A stretch of 54,524 nucleotides of DNA, counting the filler, from Sluysia triapertura (Eukaryota), in assembly GCA_046118255.1 (NCBI GenBank). It is 4 parts of 4 records of this genome, joined end to end, with 100 filler letters (N's around TTAATTAATTAA, not from the genome) between each part and the next. Parts side by side here need not be neighbours in the genome. Positions count along the whole stretch, not along the records: positions 26,395 to 39,540 come from JBJNIA010056882.1; 3 more parts are not named here. One strand, 5' to 3'. The translations under genes were made by a program, and so were the position numbers. Under the pieces are notes generated by a model that saw only the letters and a program-made list of their open reading frames with translations, was not told the origin of the DNA and did no database searches. Positions 26,395-39,540 of the stretch are shown here, one piece after another (the first letter of the stretch is position 1; each line of letters opens with the position of its first letter).

Positions 26395-26414
26395 ATAATA
26401 ATTTTATAGTATAA

Positions 26415-26448
<34 letters not shown>

Positions 26449-26610
26449 TATATTATATTATAATAATAATAATATATTATATTTTATAATATAATATAAT
26501 AATAATTTTTTATAATATTTATAATTTTTACAATTTTTTACATAAAACAAAAAATAAAATTAAAATTTTTACACCTTTACAAATTCATTCCATCATAGGA
26601 AGATTTGTCC

Positions 26611-27567
26611 TCAAAAGTGGGATAAATCATAAAATCGATCATAAAAAGTTGAATGAATTATTGTTTTGTTAATGTCTAAAGAGTCACTTATATGGTTAAC
26701 TGTCGAGGTCGAACGCATCGCCGTCATCGCTGGAATCTGTTGTTTTCCGATGATCCAAAAATTCTTTCCTGGGAACGTCCACACGGGCGAAGTTGTACCT
26801 GTGATCTGACGGGAATTGTCGATATAAGGTGATGTTGGTGGCGATCGACAGGTGATCATGTTGTTGACGACCATTTCTGCTGGGCCAGGTGGAAGAAAAA
26901 GAGAAGGAGAAAGCAGATTACAATTGGGAATAAAGGATAGGTCATGCTTTCTGATATAATCAAATAGATGGACAAATTCAGTGGCCATTTTTACACAATC
27001 AAATCGCGGCAATACAGAATATAAGAGTTTGAAAGTTTGCCGAGTATCGAGAAATAAGATTGCGATTATTGAAATTGATAATTCCTCGGACCCATCCGAA
27101 AGGAATGTGTAGTGTTCTTAAGACCAAGCTAGGGTTGGAACTTGGCCAATAAATATCGCTGTGTATCGTAAAGGTCATTGGTTGTTTTTAGATCGTCTTC
27201 TTTAAGACCATGTACGTCAGTACGAAAGTTGGATAACCTGCAATAATGACGGACTTTTGCCTCCCTGTGGTATTGTTTACTATATGGCGTACGTGCCAAT
27301 TGGATAATCATTGGGTTATCCTCCAAATCAACAAGCCACAAACAAAAGGCGTTCTTCATCAAAGATGGATAATGGAGGTTTGTGTGTAAAGGAAGAACCT
27401 CCCATCCATCTGGCGATATTATCAAGATCTTTTCATAGAAGCAGGGCAAAAAATGAATTAGGATCTCTCGGTGGCAATAAGAAAATAAGTGCTAGAGAAG
27501 GAGGTAGTTCCAAGGCTTCAATATATATAACGCAACCCACATTTAAGTGGGAAAGACAGGTCGACAT
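26611..27567 (-). pseudogene. Intronless, GC-elevated disrupted ORF of unknown family
   Basis: ATG at 27567 (MSTCLSHLNV...), then ORFs 27449-27129 and 27012-26611 in shifted frames. GC visibly higher than the flanks. Peptide echoes elsewhere in the window. Confidence 0.5.
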
Positions 27568-27636
27568 AGCGTCAACTCGTAAAATGACAATTTATTAACG
27601 TTAAATGTAGAATTAAATATCCTCAATATTCATAGA

Positions 27637-27917
27637 TTATACTTTTAAATTGAGGTAGAAACTGTTCTCACAGTCCGAGTATGTTAAATTTTATCCCTAC
27701 AATGACAAAAACAATTGTGTGCTGTAAAATTTGTAGAATGTTATGCTGTATATTGGAAAAAGAATCAATATGTACTGACAATCGTTAGAATAATGAAGAA
27801 AAGAAGGATTAGATCATTCTAAATCAATTAATTGTTTTGGAAATAGTGAGATAACTCAATTAATAATTCCGAAAGACAATACTATTTCAGAGAAATTGAA
27901 ATATTGACCGGCGTTGG
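27637..27917 (+). pseudogene. Disrupted exon resembling the end of an F5/8 type C domain
   Basis: catag acceptor; EYVKFYPYNDKNNCVL..FVECY (compare RYVRxxP...LRxELYGC); ends FREIEILTGV/gtaaaa; internal stops. Confidence 0.3.
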
Positions 27918-29937
27918 TAAAACTACATTCAAGAGTTGCGTCTTTAAATTATTTATATTAACCTTTTAATAACTTTAAATTCAAAACTCAGAAAAACAAA
28001 GATTTACCTTCAATTATATTCTCTATATCACATTAAATATAATATAACAATTACGACAATAAATATCAATGATATTATAATAAATATTATAATCAAGATA
28101 TGTAAAACATTAATCAAATGACCGTTAACTTATAGAGCATTAATAGCATAAAATTACACAATTAAGAAAAGTTACCGCAAGCGACAACCAAAATTGTAAG
28201 ATTAAATTAAATCAGTATAATCATATGCAAAATAAGTAATATAAGTAATAAGTAATATTTATCTTTTAATACTATAATTCAAATTGAACTCACGGTTCAC
28301 AATTCTAATAATATGAAATTCTTAAAAATTTCATATTGCTTAAATTTTTGAATTAAAATCTGTATTTTAATACATTATTATTATTTGCATTATTGAATAA
28401 ACTTTATTATTCCACGTGTTACTATTGTTTAACTGGAATATTCCATTTAATCGAATCACCACTCACAAAATAAATTTTTTACGTAGTAAATAAATTATAA
28501 AGTTATAAGCTTTATAAAATTTCAGAGAGATAATATGTATTAATTAAAAAAATTATCGATTAAATTATATTATTTTTAAATATTAGGATCACACAAACTA
28601 TCTCTACGTAACCTCGCTTTAATAGCGGAATTTAATCATAGCGTACTTTTATAGTATCGTTTATAGTATCATTTAGAGTATCGTTTCTTGACCTCCATTC
28701 GTCCCTTTTAACGTTACGCTGACATTTACAAGTCCAATATGGTAAGGGACTCATAAATTTACATAAAGCATCAATAAAATCAAAAGTTAAAGATTTACCA
28801 ACATATTGTTCGGGTTATCAGAAGATAAATGATTGTAATTGTATCAATATTTTCTAAAATTTTACAAAAAATTTATTAGTATATTTATTAATTAATTTAC
28901 TGAAAATTATTTGAAAATCATTTTTGATCAATAACTTTCCGTATGATGTTTGCATAAGAGCGGGTATAACATATAATAAAATACAATTACGAAATTTATT
29001 GAAATATTTTAAGATTGATTTGTAATAAATTGTAATTAATTGTCGCAAAAGCATGAGTTATATTAAGGTAACTATTATTTGATTTCTCTTGTAATATATT
29101 CTTCCACACATTAAAGCTCGTTTGTATAAATTTTCCATTTTTGTTTTTAATAAAAGTTATATTAATAATAATAATAGTATTGCTTTTTGTTAATTATGTA
29201 TTCGACTGGTTGAAAGATTATAATAAGCTTAAATAATTTTTGCGCTAATTTTAAAAAATTAATTGCATAAATGTAGCAACCCTCTATTAAATCAAATAAG
29301 GATAAATTATTTTAACGGAAATTGATAATAAAAAACCCGCAGAATTTAAAATTAAATCAATCTTCTAACAAAAATTTTAAGTAACATAAATGAGACTATT
29401 ATTTTTCTATTTTTAATAAAAACCTTTCGGTTTAACTTCTTTTCCTTCCAAGCATAATCAATATATTATTATTCTTTTGCGCTAAGCTTAATTTTTAAAT
29501 GTTCTAAATTATTGCCCAAATTGGTGTTAGGAATGGTCTCAAGAACACATGAGAAAACAAATCACTTTAAAATAAATCATAAATTATGTTTCATGTGCAT
29601 CGGACTATCTGGAATTAAAATACAAATTATTTTATGCTTCAAATCTAAAATGAATATTAGCATTCACAATTAAGCTTTTACTATTGCTTCTTTTTTTCTG
29701 CTTTTTTTCCAGGTGTCGTCAATTTCTATCCAATTACATTAATTTACAATAACAATATTTCCAAAAATGATAACATATATAAATAATGTAACACATTAAT
29801 AATGTAAATAAAATAAGAGAATACAAAAATATCAATAAATCATTTCTTTTCAAAATAAATAAAAATGGTTTAGTAAATAATCTATTTTCAAATTACATAT
29901 TTAGAATTAGTTTCTAACGTTTCAGTTTATTTACGAA

Positions 29938-30065
29938 ATGATCATTTTTAAAATTCTTACCATAAAATTAATACTACATTACATTAAAAATGATATTATA
30001 TCAGTGGATAAAGCCATAAAGCCAAATGGATTCAAAGTACTCTTTGACAATAATGACAAAACTTG
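29938..30065 (+). CDS. Exon A of F5/8-type-C/fucolectin-like repeat gene (5' boundary uncertain)
   Basis: ...IKPNGFKVLFDNNDKT then TG/gtttgt; phase 2 joins exon B to give LFDNNDKTC. Confidence 0.55.
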
Positions 30066-30604
30066 GTTTGTTATCTTTTTAAAATTTTGGATTTAAAAAT
30101 TAATCATAATGTTTGAAATAATTAAAAATAAAATAAATTTTAACAGTAATATATGATTTTATTACAATTGAATAATTATCTTATTAAATTAGCGATTAGA
30201 AGAAGTCAAGGCATTAAATTTTAAAAATAATTATATAATGACCAATATTCACAATAAACTGAAAAGCTATTTAATAACAGTTTGGAACCAAAATCTTCCA
30301 ATGACCCAGCATATTTCCAATGAATGTTTATTTTATTTATATAGCAACTTTAACAAACGCAGTATCATAGAATTCCGAATCCTTATAGAAAGAATTTAAA
30401 AATTAATCTTAGAGACTTTGGAATATTATTTTATAATATCAACATCAGTAAACAATATTATAATTATTAAATTTCTAACGTTATTATTTTTCCTGAAGCT
30501 GTGCGAGTTTTTAACCCAATTTTTACAATATTTTTACAATAATTTTAAAATATTCCAATCCAACATGCACAGCAATGACTTGTGGATTTTATAAACATTT
30601 CACG

Positions 30605-31354
30605 TGTTAGATTGTCACCACAACTCTATAATATAATGTAAAATATCATAACACTTTAAAATTATTTACAACTATTTAAAAATTAATTAAAATCATAGAT
30701 AATGCTTTAAAAGTATTTATTAAAATCTCTTAAAACGTAATTATTTTCCAAAAAAGAAATTACTTTTCGAAAAAAGTAAATTAGCTTATAAAAATAGAAT
30801 AGAAGTTTCTAGAATGTCCTAGAACATTCCAGTGGCTGATGACTAGTACATAAACTAACTTCAGTTTACTGAAAATAGCCATTTTAAAAAATTTATCGAT
30901 TCATTTTTGCAGCGCCTTTGTTCTAGGAACGGTTCAAAATTCGCAGTCATTCAACAATTTGGAAAATATCCATCGGATATTATCGGATAACATCCATTCT
31001 TGGTAATTTATGTATTTGTAGGGTCAATTTCAACTTTAGAAGTTGAAATTTTAAAATACACGTAAATTTCATAACATTTTGTAAATCTTTTTCTAAGTCT
31101 CCGATATATTGAGGGCTAATATTAATTTAAAGTGTTCGAGTGTTAGATTAAACGCTCTCTGAGCTTTAATCCATAGAATAATAATCTTTTTATAATTTAT
31201 TTTTTTGTCTTATTAATATAAATAAAATATAAAAGTATTTTATAAATAAAATTAACGTTTTTCTTTTACTTAATTATTAAAGAATTTTTAAGCATAAATT
31301 ATTAAAGTTTTTTTAATACTATTGAGCACTTGTTAACACCCTATCCACATAACA
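30605..31354 (+). mobile_element. Solo-LTR-like element with heat-shock element (copy 1)
   Basis: Starts TGTTAG, ends CATAACA (TGTTA/TAACA inverted ends); first ~290 bp align by eye with the reverse complement of 36780-37025. No target-site duplication found. Confidence 0.55.
30801..30854 (+). promoter_or_regulatory. Heat-shock element plus TATA-like box
   Basis: aGAAg tTTCt aGAAt gTCCt aGAAc aTTCc at 30801-30830 (5 of 6 pentamers perfect); TACATAAA at 30847-30854. Confidence 0.75.
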
Positions 31355-32024
31355 TTTAGATAAATTATTAGCTTACTTAGTTACAGGAACACCCTCTCCA
31401 CGACATAAGAACCATACACGTCAGTTCTTATATAAAAATACATGTTATAAATTTGTTAATGTGTTTCTTTTATTACGATATGTTTTTATTATTGTTGGTA
31501 TTAATTAATAGTGCTTCAAAATAAGTCAAAGATAGTTTAAAATAATTTTATGTAATATGGTTAATTTTAAAATGTTTGCTATCAAAACTCACTTAATTGT
31601 TCAATTGGCACTTTAAGCTAATCAAATGTCCAACAAAACCTTTGCAATATTTCTTTTTTACATTGTTTGGGCTTTAGTTTTTACTTAGTGTAATCGTAGT
31701 AGTACATTGACAATTAAATCAGCATATTAATATAATCGATAATATAGGATTTGGTGTAACGTGATAATTCTTGGCTATGTATATGCTTAAATAAATTTCC
31801 GAGATTTTTAAAAAATATTTTTCACATTTATTAAATATTAAATATAACCTTTTTAATTTCTTTTTCTATAAAGTTTAATTAATTTTTGTATCTAATTTAA
31901 AAATTTTATATTCTAAATTTTATATATTATATATTTTTAAATTATATAATATGGACCTAAATTTTATATATTATATATATTATTCATAACTAATTATAAA
32001 ATAAATTAATAAATTTCTCTTTAG

Positions 32025-32281
32025 TATTTTTCTACCTAATAATTCCGAATGGTTTTTAACATTAGAAGGATATGGAATTGTTGAAAAAATCAGAATAGCA
32101 TCGAAATCAAATTATTCAAATATATATGTACATTCGTATAATCTCAATAAAATAGTTTATTCTCAAATTATATCTGGGAAAGCTATTGAATTCATTTACG
32201 AAAATGGATTCTTAACAACAATGCTGGCATTCTTCGTACCAGATAAAATAAACTCTTTTTGTGAAATTACAATTTTGGGAG
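32025..32281 (+). CDS. Exon B of F5/8-type-C/fucolectin-like repeat gene
   Basis: ctctttag acceptor, 85 open codons IFLPNNSEWFLTLEGYGIVEKIRI...SFCEITILG, G/gtaaga donor. CEITILG matches the CEVEVxG domain end. Confidence 0.7.
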
Positions 32282-33661
32282 GTAAGATATTTATTTGAAT
32301 AAAAATTGCTTAGAAATAAGTGGAGTGTTCATTATTAGTAAGACTAAGAAATTCTTGGTTTTCTGAATAACGTTATAATTATATCTAATTTAACAAAATA
32401 TATGTTCTGTATTAATATTATATTTTATTTTGTGAAAATTCACAAAAGTGGAAAGAGTATATTTTAAGAATTAAACATGTGTTTAAAAATTTTTGGTCAA
32501 CATTTTGTTGATCATTTTATATTAAATTTGTAATATTTTTCATACCCTTTTGTGCTTTAATAAAACTTTAGCGTTGGAGGAAATTTAATTTCCAATGAAA
32601 CATAATTACTTCTTTCAAATATCTTTTTCAATTTAATAAAAATTTTAATTTTAATTAACCTCAACTTATTAATTAGTTTTAGTTTAGCTAAATAATTTTT
32701 GTCCATTTTGTCCGTAAAAGAAATCCAACCATTACTACGTATAGGAGATTAGTAATGATTTTCCAAGTTTTTCAAATAAACTAAAGTGTCTACAAGCTTT
32801 TCAGTGTTCCAAAACGCTTTTTATTTTTATTATTTTCCTCTTCAAGTTTTTTCATTTGGTTTTCTTGTCTGACTTATTTTCATTTCAGTGTCAACTGTGT
32901 ATTACATTATTTAAGTGTACATTGTCAGAATCACTAAAGCGTAGAAAAGTCTAATATTTTTGAATGGTTTCGAGTAATTTAATAAAATTTATTTTTAATT
33001 TTTTGTACTATTTTTAGTAATTATAATTATAGACAAAATATTTGTAAACAAAAGAGTTTCTGCATTTACCTCAATTTTGAATATCAAGGCAATATATCGT
33101 AATTTAAGTATTTTATACAATTATGGAAATATTTACTAAGTAAGAAACATAAAAAGGTTTTACGACAATAACACTAATTAACAACAAGCACTTAGAACAC
33201 AATTATTCTAAAATACTTAATTTTAGAATAATCAGTTTTTGCACTTTGAAAATGCAAATTTCAAAAAAGAATTAATTGTTAAAAACAAAAGAAAAATATT
33301 TGACTTTAATTGCTCTAAAGATCATGGTATTATGACAGTTTAACTGTTGTCAAATAATTATTATGAAATATATAATAAAGTCTTTCTAGTCATTAAAGAT
33401 TTTGCATATATTTTAAACTTTGCAGTTGAGTACAAAAAGCTTTGTTTAAAATGATGCGAAAATAAAAATAAAGTGTGGGTGTTAGCATCAATTTTTGACT
33501 TTTGTAAAGTAAAATTCATGCTAAAATTTGTTAATTTGGTTTCGCAAGTTTTGGAACGAGTTTTAACCTTAAGATTAAAATTTTCAAATCTTAATCTTAA
33601 TTCCAATCTATAGCTAAATGTACAAAATGCATTGTGGTAAATTTACGATGAGATATATATA

Positions 33662-33722
33662 ATATAATATATTAATTTATATTGCACTCATATCTATTGC
33701 GTAAGTACTCAAAAGCGCTTAA
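33662..33722 (-). mobile_element. L2/Crack LINE 3' terminus
   Basis: Reverse complement ttaagcgcttttgagtact...atgagtgcaatataaattaat. Confidence 0.6.
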
Positions 33723-34072
33723 ATTAAATTAAATACAAAAAGTTTATAATTTTTTCTAGGCCACAAAGTTATTTGATTGCGGCTGTTTATTGAATAATCC
33801 ATAAAAGTTTTAAATAATTTAATAATTTAAAATGTGTTCAGTGCACATGAAATAATGTGCCTTTATTTCCTATATTCTGTGTAAAATTATAATTTTATGG
33901 GCCACAAAAATTCTGAATTAAGGAGGCATTTTATAAAATAAGTTTTTTTATAGAAAAAAATTGATAAATACATTGAAAAATGTGTATTTTATAATTTTGA
34001 AATATTTTATTTGCCAGTAATTTTTTAAAACAACATTCTATAATAAATGCATAAAATATTTATTTTATAAAG

Positions 34073-34181
34073 TAATGGTGAATTACCATCCAGAAATGTT
34101 TAAATATATCCAGTATGAAGATTTGAAAAATGTAAAAGATGTACCTCCTTCTTTGTTTGATAATAACATCAATTTAAAACC
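34073..34181 (+). CDS. Exon C of F5/8-type-C/fucolectin-like repeat gene
   Basis: Phase-1 acceptor matches exon B; VMVNYHPEMFKY...PPSLFDNNINLKP repeats the LFDNN motif and ends in phase 2 like exon A; gttagt donor. Confidence 0.6.
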
Positions 34182-35015
34182 GTTAGTAAAACTGATATAT
34201 AACGTGAATAAATGTGCATTGAAAAGCAACAAATTAAATATTTTTCATTAAATTTTGAATTAAAATAAAAAAGAAAATTGCTTATAGGCACATTATTATA
34301 TATTTTTCTATTAAAATTATTCAAGTATTGTAATAAAATTTCACATTTAAAATATATTTTTTCTAAGACACAGTTTAATCTAAACGTATTACAATGTTAA
34401 TTTTTTTAACGAACAAAATTTATACAGTTAGTTAATTATTGATGTATTTAAGTAAATATAACAATAATACATTATTTCATAAAGGGCTAATATCCATTTT
34501 GAAATAAATACCTAATATTTCTACAATAGAAACAACTTTGTCGTCTATTTGAATATTTAATAATATTCTAAGATATACTATCTCCTGCTAAGTGATTCTA
34601 GATTTTTAAAAACAAACTATTAATTATTCTACTACCTCTGCGCATTTTGCAAATAATTGTTATCTTAAAATATAATCATTTTAGTTATTGCATTTTACGG
34701 ATGCATAATGAATACTATTACCAACATATGCAAACCTGCAAACTTATCAAAACAAACTTCTGCAGTATAACTATAGAAATACTTCGGGGCAGTATAAAAT
34801 TATTGGGGCATATATATTCTTACTGGCTAATTGGGTATAATTAGGTATAGTTAAGTATAAGAGTATAAGATTGAGTATAATAAACCATTATTACATTTCT
34901 TACATTATTAGATTTCTTAAAATGTTGCATTTCCAGGCGATATATTTCCAAACATTTCCAATTCAACACTATTTATTATTACAGTTAATTGTTTAATTAG
35001 AGTTGGTAACCTTAA

Positions 35016-35215
35016 CCTTCCGCCTTCCAGTTAGGTCCAATGGACCCGAGAGTAAATTTGACTAGTTATTTTTATTAATGTTTCATGAAAATTGTATTGA
35101 ATAAATAAAATGTATTAAATAAATCCGTTTAACAAAAAAAATTAACTTTGTTATTATGAGTCCAATAGATTCCATATGTATGCAATGCATACATACTTTT
35201 TTGGTAGACTGAAGG
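35016..35215. mobile_element. piggyBac-like MITE, 200 bp
   Basis: TTAA/CCTTCCGCCTTCC...GGTAGACTGAAGG/TTAT with internal ggtccaatggaccc motif. Confidence 0.6.
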
Positions 35216-36149
35216 TTATCGCACCAAAATTTACAATCTATATTAAAATTATTGCTAAATTATTCTTACTCTTGAAAAAATAAATTGATATATGTTACGG
35301 GTTCGTATACAGTGTACATTTTGTTTTCCTCAAAAAATGCACAAAGATAGATTTTAATTGCTAAATAAACATAGCTTTCAAATGTTGCGTAGAATCTTAA
35401 TAATATCTTATCTGCAAAAATTTAGGTATATTTTTAAAGGCTAAGCACAATAAAAATGAATTTAATAATAAAGTCTCTATTACATACGTAATTAAATTAC
35501 ATGTAAAATCAAAAGCTCAGTATGGCATACGTAATTAAATCAGAAGTTCACTATTATATGTGCAAGTTACTCCTCCAAAATGAGTATTTTAAATTTGTTC
35601 ATAATTAAGCAGAATAATGGGTACTTTTATTTTTGTTTCTTTTTCTTTTATTATAAGATTTTTTCTTTCTAATTGCAAGTACGCACAATTATGTAATGAT
35701 TATTTTTCTTTTCATAATTTTTGTAATTGCTGACAGGCACAAATAACTACTGATATCAAAATCTGATGTGTGTATTGATGTAATAACAATATTGATTTTT
35801 ATTGTGTATAAATAATATTGTAAATTATTGATAAATTATCGATTTTTAATTCATTTAACAACTTTGAATTTGGAATAATTTTAATTTTATTTGGAACAAT
35901 TTTATGTAAATAATATTTAATTTTATTTAAATTTTATAAAAGTAAGATTTTTTGTTTTATTATTTGAATTTATTGTTCGTTTAAACCTATCAAGGTTAAA
36001 TTAAAATGAGTATAAATAATCTCAACATAACACAAGACAGCACAAGTTAATTCTTTAACACAAGTTAATTCTTAAAATTTTTAAACAATCTTGGCTAGAA
36101 AAGGTCTATTCTTGGAGAGAAAATTTTTACCATATATTTTGTCGTAAAT

Positions 36150-36211
36150 AATAATACATTAATTTATATTGCGCTCATATATGCTGCGACAGTACTCAAA
36201 AACGCTTAAAG
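36150..36211 (-). mobile_element. L2/Crack LINE 3' terminus, separated from its body by an insertion
   Basis: Reverse complement ttaagcgtttttgagtact...atgagcgcaatataaattaat; same strand as the LINE body at 37026-37530. Confidence 0.65.
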
Positions 36212-37025
36212 TGCTATGGTTTTCCTTAATGCTAAACCTACGGTAAAATAAAATTGAGCAGGGTGCAGCTACAGTAAGTCTCTTACACCTCTGTGGCTAA
36301 GAAAATTGAAATCGTACTTAAACTTCTTTAAAAGTCACGTATAACGTCTTTTTATTATGAGAGTCTTACATCTATTTATCAAAGAATAAATAACAAAGAT
36401 TAAATTTTATTATTATTTTCAAAATAAACAGAGATTTAAGAATATATTAGTAATAATATAAATTAAAATCAAAATTTCTGGAAATATTTGACTTTAAATT
36501 AAAAATTTAATAATCTAAAATTCCTTTCATTACATCGAGGATGAAAAATCAATTAAATAAAATATTTTAAGTTGATTTTAATATTTTTTATCTTTCGTAA
36601 TCATAGAAGATAAGATAGAGTTTCCAAAATCCAAATTAATGCGACTGAACCAAATACCAAAATAGAGTCAATGCTAATTGTATAAAACGCCGAATAACTG
36701 ATTGAATTACTAAATTTATGATAATTGTTTCGCAAATTGACTGAATAGAATCAAAATGGCTACTGAATAAAATTAAATGCTAAATTTAAATGGCGATTTT
36801 CATTAAACTAATGCTGGTTTATATACTAGTTTATATTCTAGAACATTCTTGAAGCTTCCATTCTATTTATAGAGGCAAATCTTCCTTTTTAGAATTTCTA
36901 TTTTCTTTTTTGGATAATAAATGTTTTTTGGATTTTTGGAAACTCTTAAATATTTTTTAAATGATTTAAAAGAAATTTTAATAATATTTTACATAATTTT
37001 AAGGGGTTGTTATGGAAACCTAACA
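36212..37025 (-). mobile_element. Solo-LTR-like element with heat-shock element (copy 2), nested in a LINE
   Basis: Minus strand starts TGTTAG at 37025 and ends CCATAGCA at 36212; 5' part homologous to copy 1. Confidence 0.55.
36818..36859 (-). promoter_or_regulatory. Heat-shock element plus TATA box
   Basis: aTTCt aGAAc aTTCt tGAAg cTTCc at 36835-36859 (five perfect alternating pentamers); TATATAAA on the minus strand at 36825-36818. Confidence 0.8.
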
Positions 37026-37530
37026 ACCATAATATTTTTGAAACAGAAAGAATTTTGCCTTATTCTTAAATATTTCATTATCTTCTAGTAATTTGACAAT
37101 CTCTGGTAACTATGGTATATTTTTGAGACATAAACACTATAAAACCTATCACCTAGCTTGTTATCACTGTGGATTCTGTACAAATTATCATGCCTCAATG
37201 AAAAATTCATCCTGGTTTCCCATTTTCTTATTATTTCTAAAAGATATTCAGGACTTCGGTAATGTAAGCATTTGTAAACTATTGCCATGATTTTGAATTC
37301 TATTCTTGCTTTTATTGGTAACCAATGTAATTCTTTAAGATAAGGTGTTACACGAGATTTTCTTTCAACTTGGAGAATTAGTCTTGTTGCTTGATTAATT
37401 ATTAATTATAATTTTTTTACTTTTCTATAATGAATGGAGTACAATAAACCATTGTTAAAATCTATGCTCCTACTTTAGCTGTTTCTTTATTAATAAATTT
37501 TCGAATATTTGATATTAAGAGAAATAAGTA
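37026..37530 (-). mobile_element. L2/Crack LINE ORF2 C-terminal fragment
   Basis: RKFINKETAK...SRVTPYLKELHWLPIKARIEFKIMAIVYKCLHYRSPEYL...GDRFYSV...FKNKAKFFLFQKYY. Confidence 0.88.
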
Positions 37531-39464
37531 GGTCTTACGAATTAATATTGTGAATAATTAATAAATTAAGATCTAATTTACTTTAATAATAATTAAATTA
37601 TGATTTCTTGTTTTATTTTGATTAATGAATGTGACAATTTAAATATATTGTGCATTTTAAAATAATCATTTTTAACTTAATGGATGCAAAATAATAAATT
37701 ATATAAAATTTCAAATTACTTATAATATTCGCATTATACTATCAGATATACTATCAGATTCAGTATAAATATAAAGAAAAGAAAGAGCAAGATGGATATT
37801 TTTTCGTTATTTAATCTTAATCAAGAAATTTTAATTACAACTTATTTCCAACATTAAATCGGGGTGGGGAAAGTGAATTAAATAAATGATTTTACAAAAT
37901 ATTTTACTATTCCAATCTCTAAGATTAAAATTACTGAATAATAATGGTAAAGGCTGGACACTCGATGAATTCAGGTGTAGTGACCAAACTTATTACTCGA
38001 AATTGCAAACTTTTCATAACACACCAACATAAACAACCACATAACACTTAAATCACCCAATCCGTAAAAATCCAGTAAACTCATGTTTAAAATCTATCCA
38101 AAAAATGAAATGAAATTTATATAAATTTATTTTCAATTTCTCTTAACCCTCCTATATAAATCTTTCTCTTACTCAGTTTCACTTCTCCTTAACTTTCTAT
38201 CCAACTGTCCTTTTTTCTAACACTCCTTTGTCTCATTATCATCACAAACCTAATCAACATCAATATCATCATGAAGCTCAAATAAAACAGTCACGAGCAT
38301 CACGAACATCAACAATTACAGTCAGAAGTTTAAAGTCTAAGAGAACACTAACGCAATTCGACATGCCAACTTTATCAAAATTCTCATTACAATCCACAAT
38401 GCGCTTTTGCGATTCTAATTTTAAAGAATATCTTGAAATGCAAATACGCCTTGGACATTAAATCGAGGCAAGCTAAAGTAGAACATGAATTAATTATGCA
38501 AGATCGAGCAGTTGTTCACACAGACCTAAGAGAACAGTCTCAAGAAATTCAAGACGAAAGTTAATGACGTGATTTGACCCTAGAATCCTAAGCTCTTCAA
38601 AGTAGTATTAGTGGAGGTGATACAATCAATATACCTGAGGATAATGGTTCATTATTTGATAGTACCTCTTTCTCGTATAAAACATCAAATACATATACCG
38701 GCGCAATCGCTGCATGATTATATGATTTTCTAAATAGTCATTCAATAAAGCGATTTCTACAACATAGCTTGTATGATTATCTACAATCGCAGCATTTATT
38801 TAGCATTTATATCGGAATTACAACGGTATGATGATTGAAAATTGTATAAACAGTAGGGGTTCGACAGTTTTACTCAGTGCTCAACAAAATCCACAAATTC
38901 AACAGCAATATTTATTTAATCCACCACTTTTTCAACAATTTTTGTTTTCCAGCACGTGATTCACTCTTATTGAAACATATTTAATACTTCAATTATTTGA
39001 AAATCATTTTCGACAATTTCGTTATCTGGTATAGATGAAGTACATGGTTGTCTTTCATCAGCATCTAATAATTCAATACCACATCTAAACTCATCATCAA
39101 CAGCATTGTTTGCAAAGCAAAGAACACCAAAGGCATTTAGAGCGAAAATTAAACGTTTATAACATATCAGGCTGAGTTTAGATAAGTTTCAATACAAAAA
39201 GGAATCAAACATAAGTTTTCAACTTATTTTAGAAGCTATGAATGAATCCAATCTTATGGGTGTTTCTGTGTGCGTGAACATTATAATAAAATTATAATAT
39301 ATAGATATTTAATAAATATGAAAACATTGTAAAATAAAAATGATCCATTTACAATTTTTTTGCCATGCTGGAAATTAAATTCGTGTAAGTCTAATCCATT
39401 TAAAAGTATGATTTTGAAACATTATTACTTCATTATTGGCTTAATATAAACGTGAAATTAGCTC

Positions 39465-39510
39465 TTAACAGTCGGATGGTAGAGGGGGGGGTCCAATGGA
39501 CTCCGGGTGG
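39465..39510 (+). mobile_element. piggyBac-like element end, cut by the gap
   Basis: TTAAC...gggggggtccaatggactcc, same subterminal motif as the 35016 MITE. Confidence 0.45.
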
Positions 39511-39540
39511 ATAAGAAATAACTTTTGGCAAGGGAATATA

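What the first reader, a model, noticed from the sequence alone, without database searches (positions are those of the whole stretch)
30605..31354. LTR-like element carrying a complete heat-shock promoter module
Seen: two copies (here and 36212-37025) that differ widely yet both keep 5-6 correctly phased nGAAn units next to a TATA-like box, with changes mostly at the n positions. Known: three or more alternating nGAAn units bind HSF trimers, and heat-activated LTR elements exist (ONSEN in Arabidopsis). Inference: a stress-inducible retroelement family spreading HSF-responsive promoters through this genome.
Basis: partly seen in the sequence, partly recalled or inferred. Interest (0 to 1): 0.7.

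Follow-up and report, generated by a model that had tools for sequence, protein, structure and literature searches.

The report
Dispersed repeat carrying a heat-shock promoter
Two old, inverted copies of a multi-copy repeat each keep a textbook heat-shock promoter (five to six HSF-binding units next to a TATA box), a kind of stress-wired mobile element already known from plants, worms, flatworms and slime moulds; whether this one is an LTR could not be shown.

Summary
The heat-shock module is real. Copy A has six phased nGAAn units (one imperfect) at 30801-30830. Copy B has five perfect units at 36835-36859. Each array abuts a TATA box. Arrays this long are expected about 0.007 times in the piece by chance.

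The copies are inverted, not direct. Significant homology covers only about 260-300 bp (30605/30650-30907 against 37025-36769), not 750-814 bp.

Contigs of the one public run that holds this DNA show a multi-copy family. About 92-137 distinct contigs cover the module, against 1-8 at the single-copy places checked. They also show that copy B (36211-37031) interrupts a very abundant LINE fragment. At four sampled places the other family copies agree with A rather than B. They carry a CCAAT box and a sixth HSE unit where B has a deletion, so the promoter belongs to the family.

The LTR reading is neither proven nor refuted. B has TG...CA ends and a U3-R-U5-like layout. But there is no paired copy, no target duplication, no PBS or PPT, and no retroelement gene anywhere in the 13 kb. 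With only two copies the HSE array is no better conserved than the rest of the module (80% against 77%). No RNA data exist. Element-borne heat-shock promoters are already described, so this is a new member of a known kind.

The parts
30605..30907 (-). Copy A of the shared module; promoter sense is the minus strand (HSE then TATA then ~180 bp to the CTAACA end at 30605)
   Evidence: Gapped blastn 30650-30907 against 37008-36769, 71% identity, E 7e-25. Segment identities are 70-85%. The extension to 30605 is borderline (39/500 shuffles).
30801..30830 (.). HSE array of copy A: six alternating nGAAn/nTTCn units, the fourth imperfect (TCC)
   Evidence: Read directly; pattern search; array count against simulations.
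30787..30797 (.). TATA box of copy A, 3 bp from the array
   Evidence: Read directly.
36211..37031 (+). Copy B as a discrete 821-bp insert, bounded on both sides by one LINE fragment; starts TGCTATGG (36212) and ends CTAACA (37025)
   Evidence: Contig joints 36210->37032 and 33722..33731->37026..37063 in other genomic copies (table 5).
36769..37025 (+). Shared module within copy B, promoter sense on the plus strand
   Evidence: It is covered by 92-137 distinct contigs of run X1 at 80% likeness or more (tables 3 and 7).
36835..36864 (.). HSE array of copy B: five perfect alternating units plus a sixth non-alternating aTTCt. A 12-nt deletion relative to A, just upstream of it (break at 36830), removed one more unit and the CCAAT region
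   Evidence: The loose-end consensus at 36830 from 137 contigs carries CCAAT and GGAATGTTC (table 7).
36864..36872 (+). TATA box of copy B (TATTTATAG; TATAAATA on the other strand)
   Evidence: Read directly.
36916..36921 (+). AATAAA about 50 bp after the TATA box, a possible poly(A) signal if this is an LTR R region
37032..37516 (-). 5'-truncated LINE fragment (called R1 here) that copy B interrupts; it encodes the C-terminal ~100 aa of an endonuclease-RT ORF2
   Evidence: phmmer: 14,077 relatives, with the match at the C-terminus of 940-1284-aa proteins that carry Exo_endo_phos + RVT_1. More than 100 distinct contigs cover each sampled position.
36151..36210 (-). 3' tail of the same R1 LINE copy, separated from its body by copy B
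   Evidence: 87% identical to 33664-33723; contig joints.

Best explanation
Both sites are decayed members of an abundant interspersed repeat family. Its ancestral sequence carried a complete RNA polymerase II heat-shock promoter. In order it has a CCAAT box, about 20 bp, six contiguous alternating nGAAn units (sites for two HSF trimers), an abutting TATA box, and then about 150 bp to a fixed element end (CTAACA) with an AATAAA on the way.

Shown:
- The arrays are far beyond chance.
- The family is multi-copy.
- B is a separate insertion into a LINE.
- A and B lie in unrelated contexts.
- Other family copies agree with A at the four places sampled.

Inferred: on heat shock, HSF trimers bind the array and start transcription about 30 bp past the TATA box, toward the near end of the element. 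That is leftward on the minus strand from about 30760 for A, and rightward from about 36895 for B.

This geometry (enhancers and TATA ~150 bp from one end and pointing at it, poly(A) signal just downstream, TG...CA ends) is what a U3-R-U5 long terminal repeat looks like. The single likeliest class is therefore a solo LTR or similar terminal repeat of a retroelement (about 0.4). The class is not established. At this locus neither copy drives any recognisable gene.
For: - HSE statistics.
- Layout read directly.
- Multi-copy family: 92-95 distinct contigs at 36874-36915 and 137 at the 36830 break, against 1 contig at 35349-35396. Summed depth is 59,665 in bin 36784-36982 against 11-22 for single-copy contigs; the tool warns this is not a calibrated copy number.
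- B is an insertion: joints 36210->37032 and 33722-33731->37026-37063.
- A has no R1 on either flank.
- Other copies match A at 36874, 36881 and 36915. At the 12-nt gap they carry CCAAT and one more HSE unit (tables 3 and 7, compared).
- Precedents for HSE promoters in mobile elements: PMC12801592, PMC6927752, PMC13602373, PMC2685390.
Against: - The HSE array is no better conserved than the rest of the module between A and B (80% against 77%).
- No RNA run holds the locus, so activity is untested.
- For the LTR class: no direct partner copy within the piece, no retroelement protein domain in any of the 61 stop-free segments of 45 aa or more, and no target-site duplication, PBS or PPT by reading.
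- The upstream halves of A and B are unrelated.
- Positions 36362-36526 are covered by 8-24 contigs, against 92-95 at positions inside the module. That fits 5'-truncated retroposon copies as well as variable U3 regions.
Confidence: 0.7

Rival explanations
1. The module is the 3' untranslated end of a non-LTR retroposon. On this reading A is a ~300-bp and B an ~820-bp 5'-truncated copy sharing a fixed 3' end. The heat-shock promoter would then be cargo that fires out of the element into flanking DNA, not the element's own promoter.
For: - The end is fixed (CTAACA in both copies) while the 5' extent varies.
- A/B homology stops at ~30907/36769 although B's insert runs on to 36211.
- Contig coverage falls away from that end: 92-95 contigs at 36874-36915, 11-24 at 36492-36526, 8-21 at 36362-36383.
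- There is no target duplication of the integrase type.
- The genome is full of truncated LINEs.
Against: - No poly(A) or microsatellite tail at the end.
- The terminal hairpin in B (z -2.0) is not kept in A (z +0.7).
- No ORF lies upstream in B's 820 bp.
- A complete CCAAT-HSE-TATA-AATAAA cassette in sense orientation near a LINE 3' end has no known rationale.
- There is no similarity to the tail of the resident LINE.
Confidence: 0.25
2. It is a non-autonomous DNA element (a MITE, Helitron fragment or similar) that spreads captured HSEs, as Helitron1_CE does in Caenorhabditis.
For: - High contig multiplicity and small size.
- No coding capacity.
- Imperfect terminal inverted match at B's ends, TGCTAT against TGTTAG.
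- There is a precedent in PMC6927752.
Against: - No clear terminal inverted repeat longer than ~6 bp.
- No TA, TTA or other duplicated target site.
- Ends are not 5'-TC...CTRR-3', and no conserved 3' hairpin.
- The promoter points out of the near end, unlike a transposase promoter.
Confidence: 0.12
3. A and B are the inverted terminal repeats of one large DIRS-1-like or foldback element spanning about 30605-37031.
For: - The orientation is inverted and the spacing is ~6 kb.
- DIRS-1 has heat-shock promoters in its inverted terminal repeats (Zuker 1984, cited in PMC2685390).
Against: - B is flanked on both sides by the two halves of one LINE copy, so it inserted alone.
- The arms are only 71% identical.
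- The interior has no RT, RNase H or tyrosine-recombinase remnant and holds another LINE tail at 33664-33729.
- With the usual HSE-to-TATA order both promoters point outward.
Confidence: 0.03
4. They are promoters plus 5' leaders of two diverged heat-shock genes or heat-induced non-coding RNA genes, not a mobile element.
For: Canonical promoter layout, with similarity continuing ~150 bp downstream of the TATA box.
Against: - Some 92-137 distinct contigs of the genome carry the module.
- No ORF or Pfam domain lies downstream of either copy, and there is no Rfam match.
- B sits inside a LINE.
Confidence: 0.03

Closest known systems
HSE-bearing Ty3/Mdg4 LTR retrotransposons of the flatworm Macrostomum lignano (PMC12801592)
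   Same: An animal mobile element with one to four canonical HSEs just upstream of the transcription start in its terminal repeat. There the HSEs were shown to be necessary for more than 250-fold heat induction.
   Different: Those are full elements with paired LTRs and gag-pol, at 4-20 copies per family. Here only solitary fragments are seen, the class is unproven, contig multiplicity is far higher, and expression is untested. There is no sequence homology.
ONSEN (Ty1/copia) of Arabidopsis and other Brassicaceae (PMC13602373, PMC8376061)
   Same: HSF-binding motifs in the LTR make the element heat-activated.
   Different: ONSEN is a plant copia element of low copy number with proven HSFA2 dependence. 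None of its defining coding parts is present here.
Helitron1_CE and related Helitrons of Caenorhabditis (PMC6927752)
   Same: A high-copy, mostly non-autonomous repeat that scatters HSEs through an animal genome and can wire nearby genes to HSF-1.
   Different: The Helitron hallmarks (TC...CTRR ends, 3' hairpin, A/T target) are not seen here. Also, the module here is a full promoter with TATA and CCAAT rather than HSEs alone.
DIRS-1 of Dictyostelium discoideum (Zuker et al. 1984, cited in PMC2685390; PMC4482531)
   Same: A retroelement whose ~330-bp inverted terminal repeats contain an active heat-shock promoter. The host genome is very AT-rich and the copies are inverted, as here.
   Different: DIRS-1 repeats bound one 4.8-kb element with tyrosine recombinase and RT. 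Here B inserted on its own, the interior is non-coding, and the surrounding LINE type points to an animal genome.

Membership tests
Heat-shock (HSF-dependent) promoter | Three or more contiguous alternating nGAAn units | tested here: met
   A has six units (one imperfect) and B has five perfect units. Chance expectation is 0.007 per piece.
Heat-shock (HSF-dependent) promoter | Array placed just upstream of a core promoter (TATA) | tested here: met
   The TATA box lies within 0-3 bp of the array in both copies. Other family copies add a CCAAT box ~20 bp upstream (table 7).
Heat-shock (HSF-dependent) promoter | HSF binding and heat-induced transcription | not testable with these tools
   No RNA run holds the locus.
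LTR of an LTR retrotransposon (or solo LTR) | Two direct copies flanking gag-pol, or at least retroelement genes next to a copy | tested here: not met
   The only partner is inverted and separately inserted. None of the 61 stop-free segments has a Pfam domain. A solo LTR would not show this feature, so the test does not exclude one.
LTR of an LTR retrotransposon (or solo LTR) | TG...CA termini with a short inverted match | tested here: inconclusive
   B's ends, fixed independently by the LINE junctions, read TGCTAT...CTAACA. A's 5' end cannot be placed because end homology is not significant.
LTR of an LTR retrotransposon (or solo LTR) | 4-6 bp target-site duplication | tested here: not met
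   No matching flanks for A or B by reading. At B the LINE lacks 11-17 nt that other copies have at the junction (table 5c). The copies are old, so decay is possible.
LTR of an LTR retrotransposon (or solo LTR) | U3-R-U5 layout: promoter near the 3' end pointing to it, poly(A) signal downstream | tested here: met
   In B, TATA at 36864-36872, AATAAA at 36916-36921 and the end at 37025. A has the same order.
DIRS-1-like element | Inverted terminal repeats bounding RT / RNase H / tyrosine recombinase genes | tested here: not met
   B is inserted on its own in a LINE, and the interior has no protein domains.
Helitron | 5'-TC, 3'-CTRR with a subterminal hairpin, insertion between A and T | tested here: not met
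   The ends read directly do not fit. The hairpin in B is not kept in A.
SINE | Pol III head (tRNA, 5S or 7SL-like) and a LINE-matching tail | tested here: not met
   ARAGORN found nothing, Rfam found nothing relevant, and there is no similarity to the resident LINE tail.
Penelope-like element terminal repeat | Hammerhead ribozyme motif in the repeat | tested here: not met
   No hammerhead in the Rfam scan at E up to 1.
Non-LTR retroposon 3' end | Fixed 3' end with variable 5' truncation, plus a 3' tail or conserved terminal stem-loop | tested here: inconclusive
   The fixed end and variable 5' extent fit. There is no tail and no conserved hairpin.

The most novel reading that the evidence does not exclude
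The family is not an LTR. It is a very abundant short retroposon or other non-autonomous repeat, in thousands of copies, whose cargo is a complete outward-firing heat-shock promoter. On this reading an animal genome carries thousands of potential HSF-binding, heat-inducible start sites. These could act as an HSF sink and put many neighbouring sequences under heat control, at a scale and in an element class not described so far.
Probability: 0.2. Interest if true: 0.65.

Novelty: new member of a known kind. Interest (0 to 1): 0.42.

Why it matters
Mobile elements that carry HSF sites are a recurring, convergent way of tying transposition and nearby gene expression to stress. Validated cases are still few: ONSEN, Macrostomum LTR elements, Caenorhabditis Helitrons and DIRS-1. 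A family with a full CCAAT-HSE-TATA cassette and very high multiplicity in an AT-rich animal genome would be another independent case. If many copies are still bound by HSF, it would be a sizeable part of that organism's heat-shock regulatory landscape. At this particular locus nothing recognisable is driven, so the local consequence is probably nil.

Tried and rejected
- Flanking heat-shock genes: I first suspected divergent heat-shock genes. No ORF or Pfam domain lies downstream of either promoter.
- Known RNA families: only one sub-threshold bacterial sRNA hit. No tRNA-like head.
- More family copies from JGI metagenomes using the HSE core pattern: 15 loci, but only the ~23-44-nt HSE itself matches, so none is a family member.
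- More family copies from IMG/VR using a conserved non-HSE word of the module: 0 hits.
- Word-index protein search with the LINE fragment: one hit only. This also suggests the organism's own predicted proteins are not in that index. I therefore did not spend a search on the short ORFs across the module.
- ESM Atlas: no usable hit.
- Only one sequencing run holds the locus and it is not RNA. The single read-laying run covered copy B only, so copy A's flanks have no multiplicity data.
- Reading B as part of a long-form 3' UTR of the LINE: rejected, because A has no LINE sequence on either side.
- Conserved terminal hairpin: rejected.
- The organism is coded and I did not identify it. The LINE type and 22% GC suggest an AT-rich animal genome, no more than that.

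Full report
**What is at the coordinates**

The piece (26395-39540) is about 22% G+C. It has no ORF longer than 133 aa.

At 30801-30830 the plus strand reads aGAAg tTTCt aGAAt gTCCt aGAAc aTTCc. That is six alternating units, the fourth imperfect. A TATAAAAATAG lies 3 bp to the left, at 30787-30797.

At 36835-36859 there are five perfect alternating units, followed by one further non-alternating aTTCt. TATTTATAG follows at 36864-36872.

The three-unit HSE pattern occurs four times in the window against 0.14 expected, and only at these two sites. Arrays of five units with at most one core mismatch are expected 0.007 times per piece under a first-order Markov model; they occur at both loci.

- The copies are inverted: A on the plus strand matches B on the minus strand.
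- Gapped blastn finds one significant match only, 30650-30907 against 37008-36769, at 71% identity and E 7e-25.
- A weak extension reaches the shared CTAACA at 30605/37025 (39 of 500 shuffles score as high).
- The other 450-550 bp of each claimed copy (30908-31420 against 36180-36768) is no more similar than shuffled sequence (99 of 500).
- The shared unit is therefore about 300 bp, not 750-814 bp.

**Layout of the module**

In the orientation where the HSEs lie upstream of the TATA box (A minus strand, B plus strand) the order is:

1. about 65 bp of conserved upstream sequence;
2. the HSE array;
3. the TATA box;
4. about 150 bp to the end of homology, with an AATAAA at 36916-36921 in B.

Identity per segment is 84% and 75% upstream, 85% over 36833-36865 (the array with flanking bases), 70% at the TATA box and 74-78% downstream. 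Within the array, 14 of 15 core positions are identical against 6 of 10 n positions (Fisher one-sided p 0.064). The array as a whole (20/25) is not better kept than the rest of the module (179/231; p 0.49).

**Family and context from the sequencing run**

One public run holds the stretch. It is kept as contigs, it is not on record as RNA, and its organism is coded. I laid it on 33600-39540 at 80% likeness. The tool warns that summed contig depth is not a copy number, so I rely mainly on counts of distinct contigs.

- Single-copy places carry 1 contig (35349-35396). The long single-copy contigs have depth 11-22.
- Module positions 36874, 36881 and 36915 carry 92-95 contigs.
- 137 contigs break at 36830.
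- Summed depth in bin 36784-36982 is 59,665.
- Positions sampled in 36362-36526 carry 8-24 contigs.
- The stretch 36983-37579 is covered by more than 100 contigs at most sampled positions, with summed depth up to about one million.

The module is therefore part of a multi-copy family. Its upstream neighbour in B is much less repeated, and the sequence to its right is an extremely abundant repeat.

**Copy B is an insertion**

The best-supported joints in other genomic copies connect 36210 to 37032. Equivalently they connect 33722-33731 to 37026-37063, with 2-20 other letters between (tables 5 and 5c).

The segment 36151-36210 is 87% identical to 33664-33723. The minus strand of 37088-37405 encodes a 106-aa fragment. 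That fragment has 14,077 relatives at E up to 0.001, matching the last ~100 residues of 940-1284-aa proteins. Those proteins carry Exo_endo_phos and RVT_1 domains.

So 36151-36210 plus 37032-37516 is one 5'-truncated LINE copy, and 36211-37031 (821 bp) interrupts its 3' untranslated tail.

Copy A has no LINE sequence on either side. The module therefore occurs in two unrelated contexts. B is not simply a long form of the LINE's 3' UTR.

The same evidence excludes reading A and B as the two arms of one DIRS-like or foldback element. B went in alone, and the interior has another LINE tail and no protein domain.

**The promoter is ancestral to the family**

Where nearly all contigs differ from the window (36874 G to A, 36881 C to T, 36915 T to A, table 3), copy A has the contigs' letter.

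Where B lacks 12 nt relative to A, the 137 contigs continue with a 30-nt consensus reported by the tool. That consensus contains CCAAT and ends in GGAATGTTC, which is one more unit pair in phase (table 7). No near-unanimous difference is listed inside B's array, although 300 rows were not shown.

The typical family member therefore has a CCAAT box about 20 bp upstream of six alternating HSE units abutting a TATA box. That is the architecture of a bona fide hsp promoter by established knowledge. Neither A nor B acquired it by chance.

**Which class of element**

For an LTR:
- An upstream-enhancer-plus-TATA promoter can be inherited through an RNA copy only by a terminal-repeat retroelement. A DNA element would carry it unchanged.
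- It sits ~150 bp from one end and points at that end.
- An AATAAA follows the predicted start.
- B has TG...CA ends.
- The size fits.

Against an LTR:
- There is no direct partner, target duplication, PBS or PPT.
- No retroelement domain appears in any of the 61 stop-free segments of 45 aa or more.
- The upstream halves are unrelated.
- Contig coverage falls steeply away from the fixed end. This, together with the fixed end itself, is equally what 5'-truncated non-LTR copies would give.

Other tests:
- The terminal hairpin in B (z -2.0) is not kept in A (z +0.7).
- There is no tRNA-like head and no hammerhead or other Rfam family.
- The Helitron ends do not fit.

My estimates are about 0.4 for an LTR-type terminal repeat, 0.25 for a non-LTR 3' end, 0.12 for a DNA element, and the remainder unknown.

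**Function**

Mechanism (inferred): HSF trimers bind the array on heat shock and fire transcription about 30 bp past the TATA box toward the near end of the element. At this locus that means leftward from ~30760 and rightward from ~36895. Neither direction meets a recognisable gene. B's transcript would run antisense into the LINE fragment. No RNA data could be obtained.

**Comparison with what is known**

HSE-bearing mobile elements are established:
- ONSEN in Brassicaceae (PMC13602373, PMC8376061);
- four Ty3/Mdg4 families in the flatworm Macrostomum lignano, with HSE-dependent induction above 250-fold (PMC12801592);
- Helitron1_CE in Caenorhabditis (PMC6927752);
- DIRS-1 in Dictyostelium, with a heat-shock promoter in its inverted terminal repeats (Zuker 1984, cited in PMC2685390).

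The metagenome scan for this very HSE word incidentally hit sequences lying just 3' of Ty3-type integrase ORFs (L014, L001) and 3' of a copia-type RT ORF (L008) in unrelated organisms. This suggests the arrangement is widespread.

The present family is thus a new member of a known kind. Its distinguishing points are the very high multiplicity and the completeness of the promoter cassette.

**Limits**

- The single read-laying run covered only copy B.
- No further family copies could be fetched, so boundaries, class and column-wise conservation remain open.
- I built no consensus of the element. Family letters quoted are those printed by the reads tool.

Noticed in passing
window 37032-37579 and 36151-36210 (minus strand): A 5'-truncated non-LTR retrotransposon copy. 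It encodes the C-terminal ~100 aa of an endonuclease-RT ORF2, including an LHWLPIKARI motif. It is by far the most repeated sequence in the piece: more than 100 distinct contigs per position and summed depth up to about one million.
   Followed up: yes
window 33664-33729: A second, much shorter copy of the same LINE's 3' tail, in the same orientation and 87% identical to 36151-36210. It is truncated after about 66 bp.
   Followed up: partly
L014:436-1117, L001:1-534, L008:157-2827: In unrelated metagenome contigs the same 23-nt HSE word lies ~150-240 bp beyond Ty3-type integrase ORFs (SH3_Tf2-1, chromo domain) and ~950 bp beyond a copia-type RVT_2 ORF. That is where a 3' LTR would be, so HSE-bearing LTR elements appear common elsewhere.
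   Followed up: partly
window 36244 (within 36211-36300): The left ~50-100 bp of B's insert is covered by 121 distinct contigs, although the next 450 bp is covered by few. No explanation so far accounts for this. It could be another repeat, an A-rich low-complexity effect, or a conserved 5' end of the element.
   Followed up: no
window 36755-36826 and 30739-30799: Two small internal duplications. In B, the ~35-bp unit starting AAATGGC occurs twice in tandem upstream of the HSEs. In A, a 20-bp A-rich unit is repeated 2-3 times just downstream of the TATA box.
   Followed up: no
window 26600-27600: A G+C-richer island (32-38%) with stop-free frames of 96-168 aa on both strands and no Pfam match. 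A GWEVLP motif in the 27132-27491 minus-strand frame recalls mariner-type transposases from memory, but no search supported this.
   Followed up: partly
window 26395-26530: An AT-only palindromic, microsatellite-like block (ATA / ATAAT units, arms 76-80% self-complementary) at the edge of the piece.
   Followed up: no
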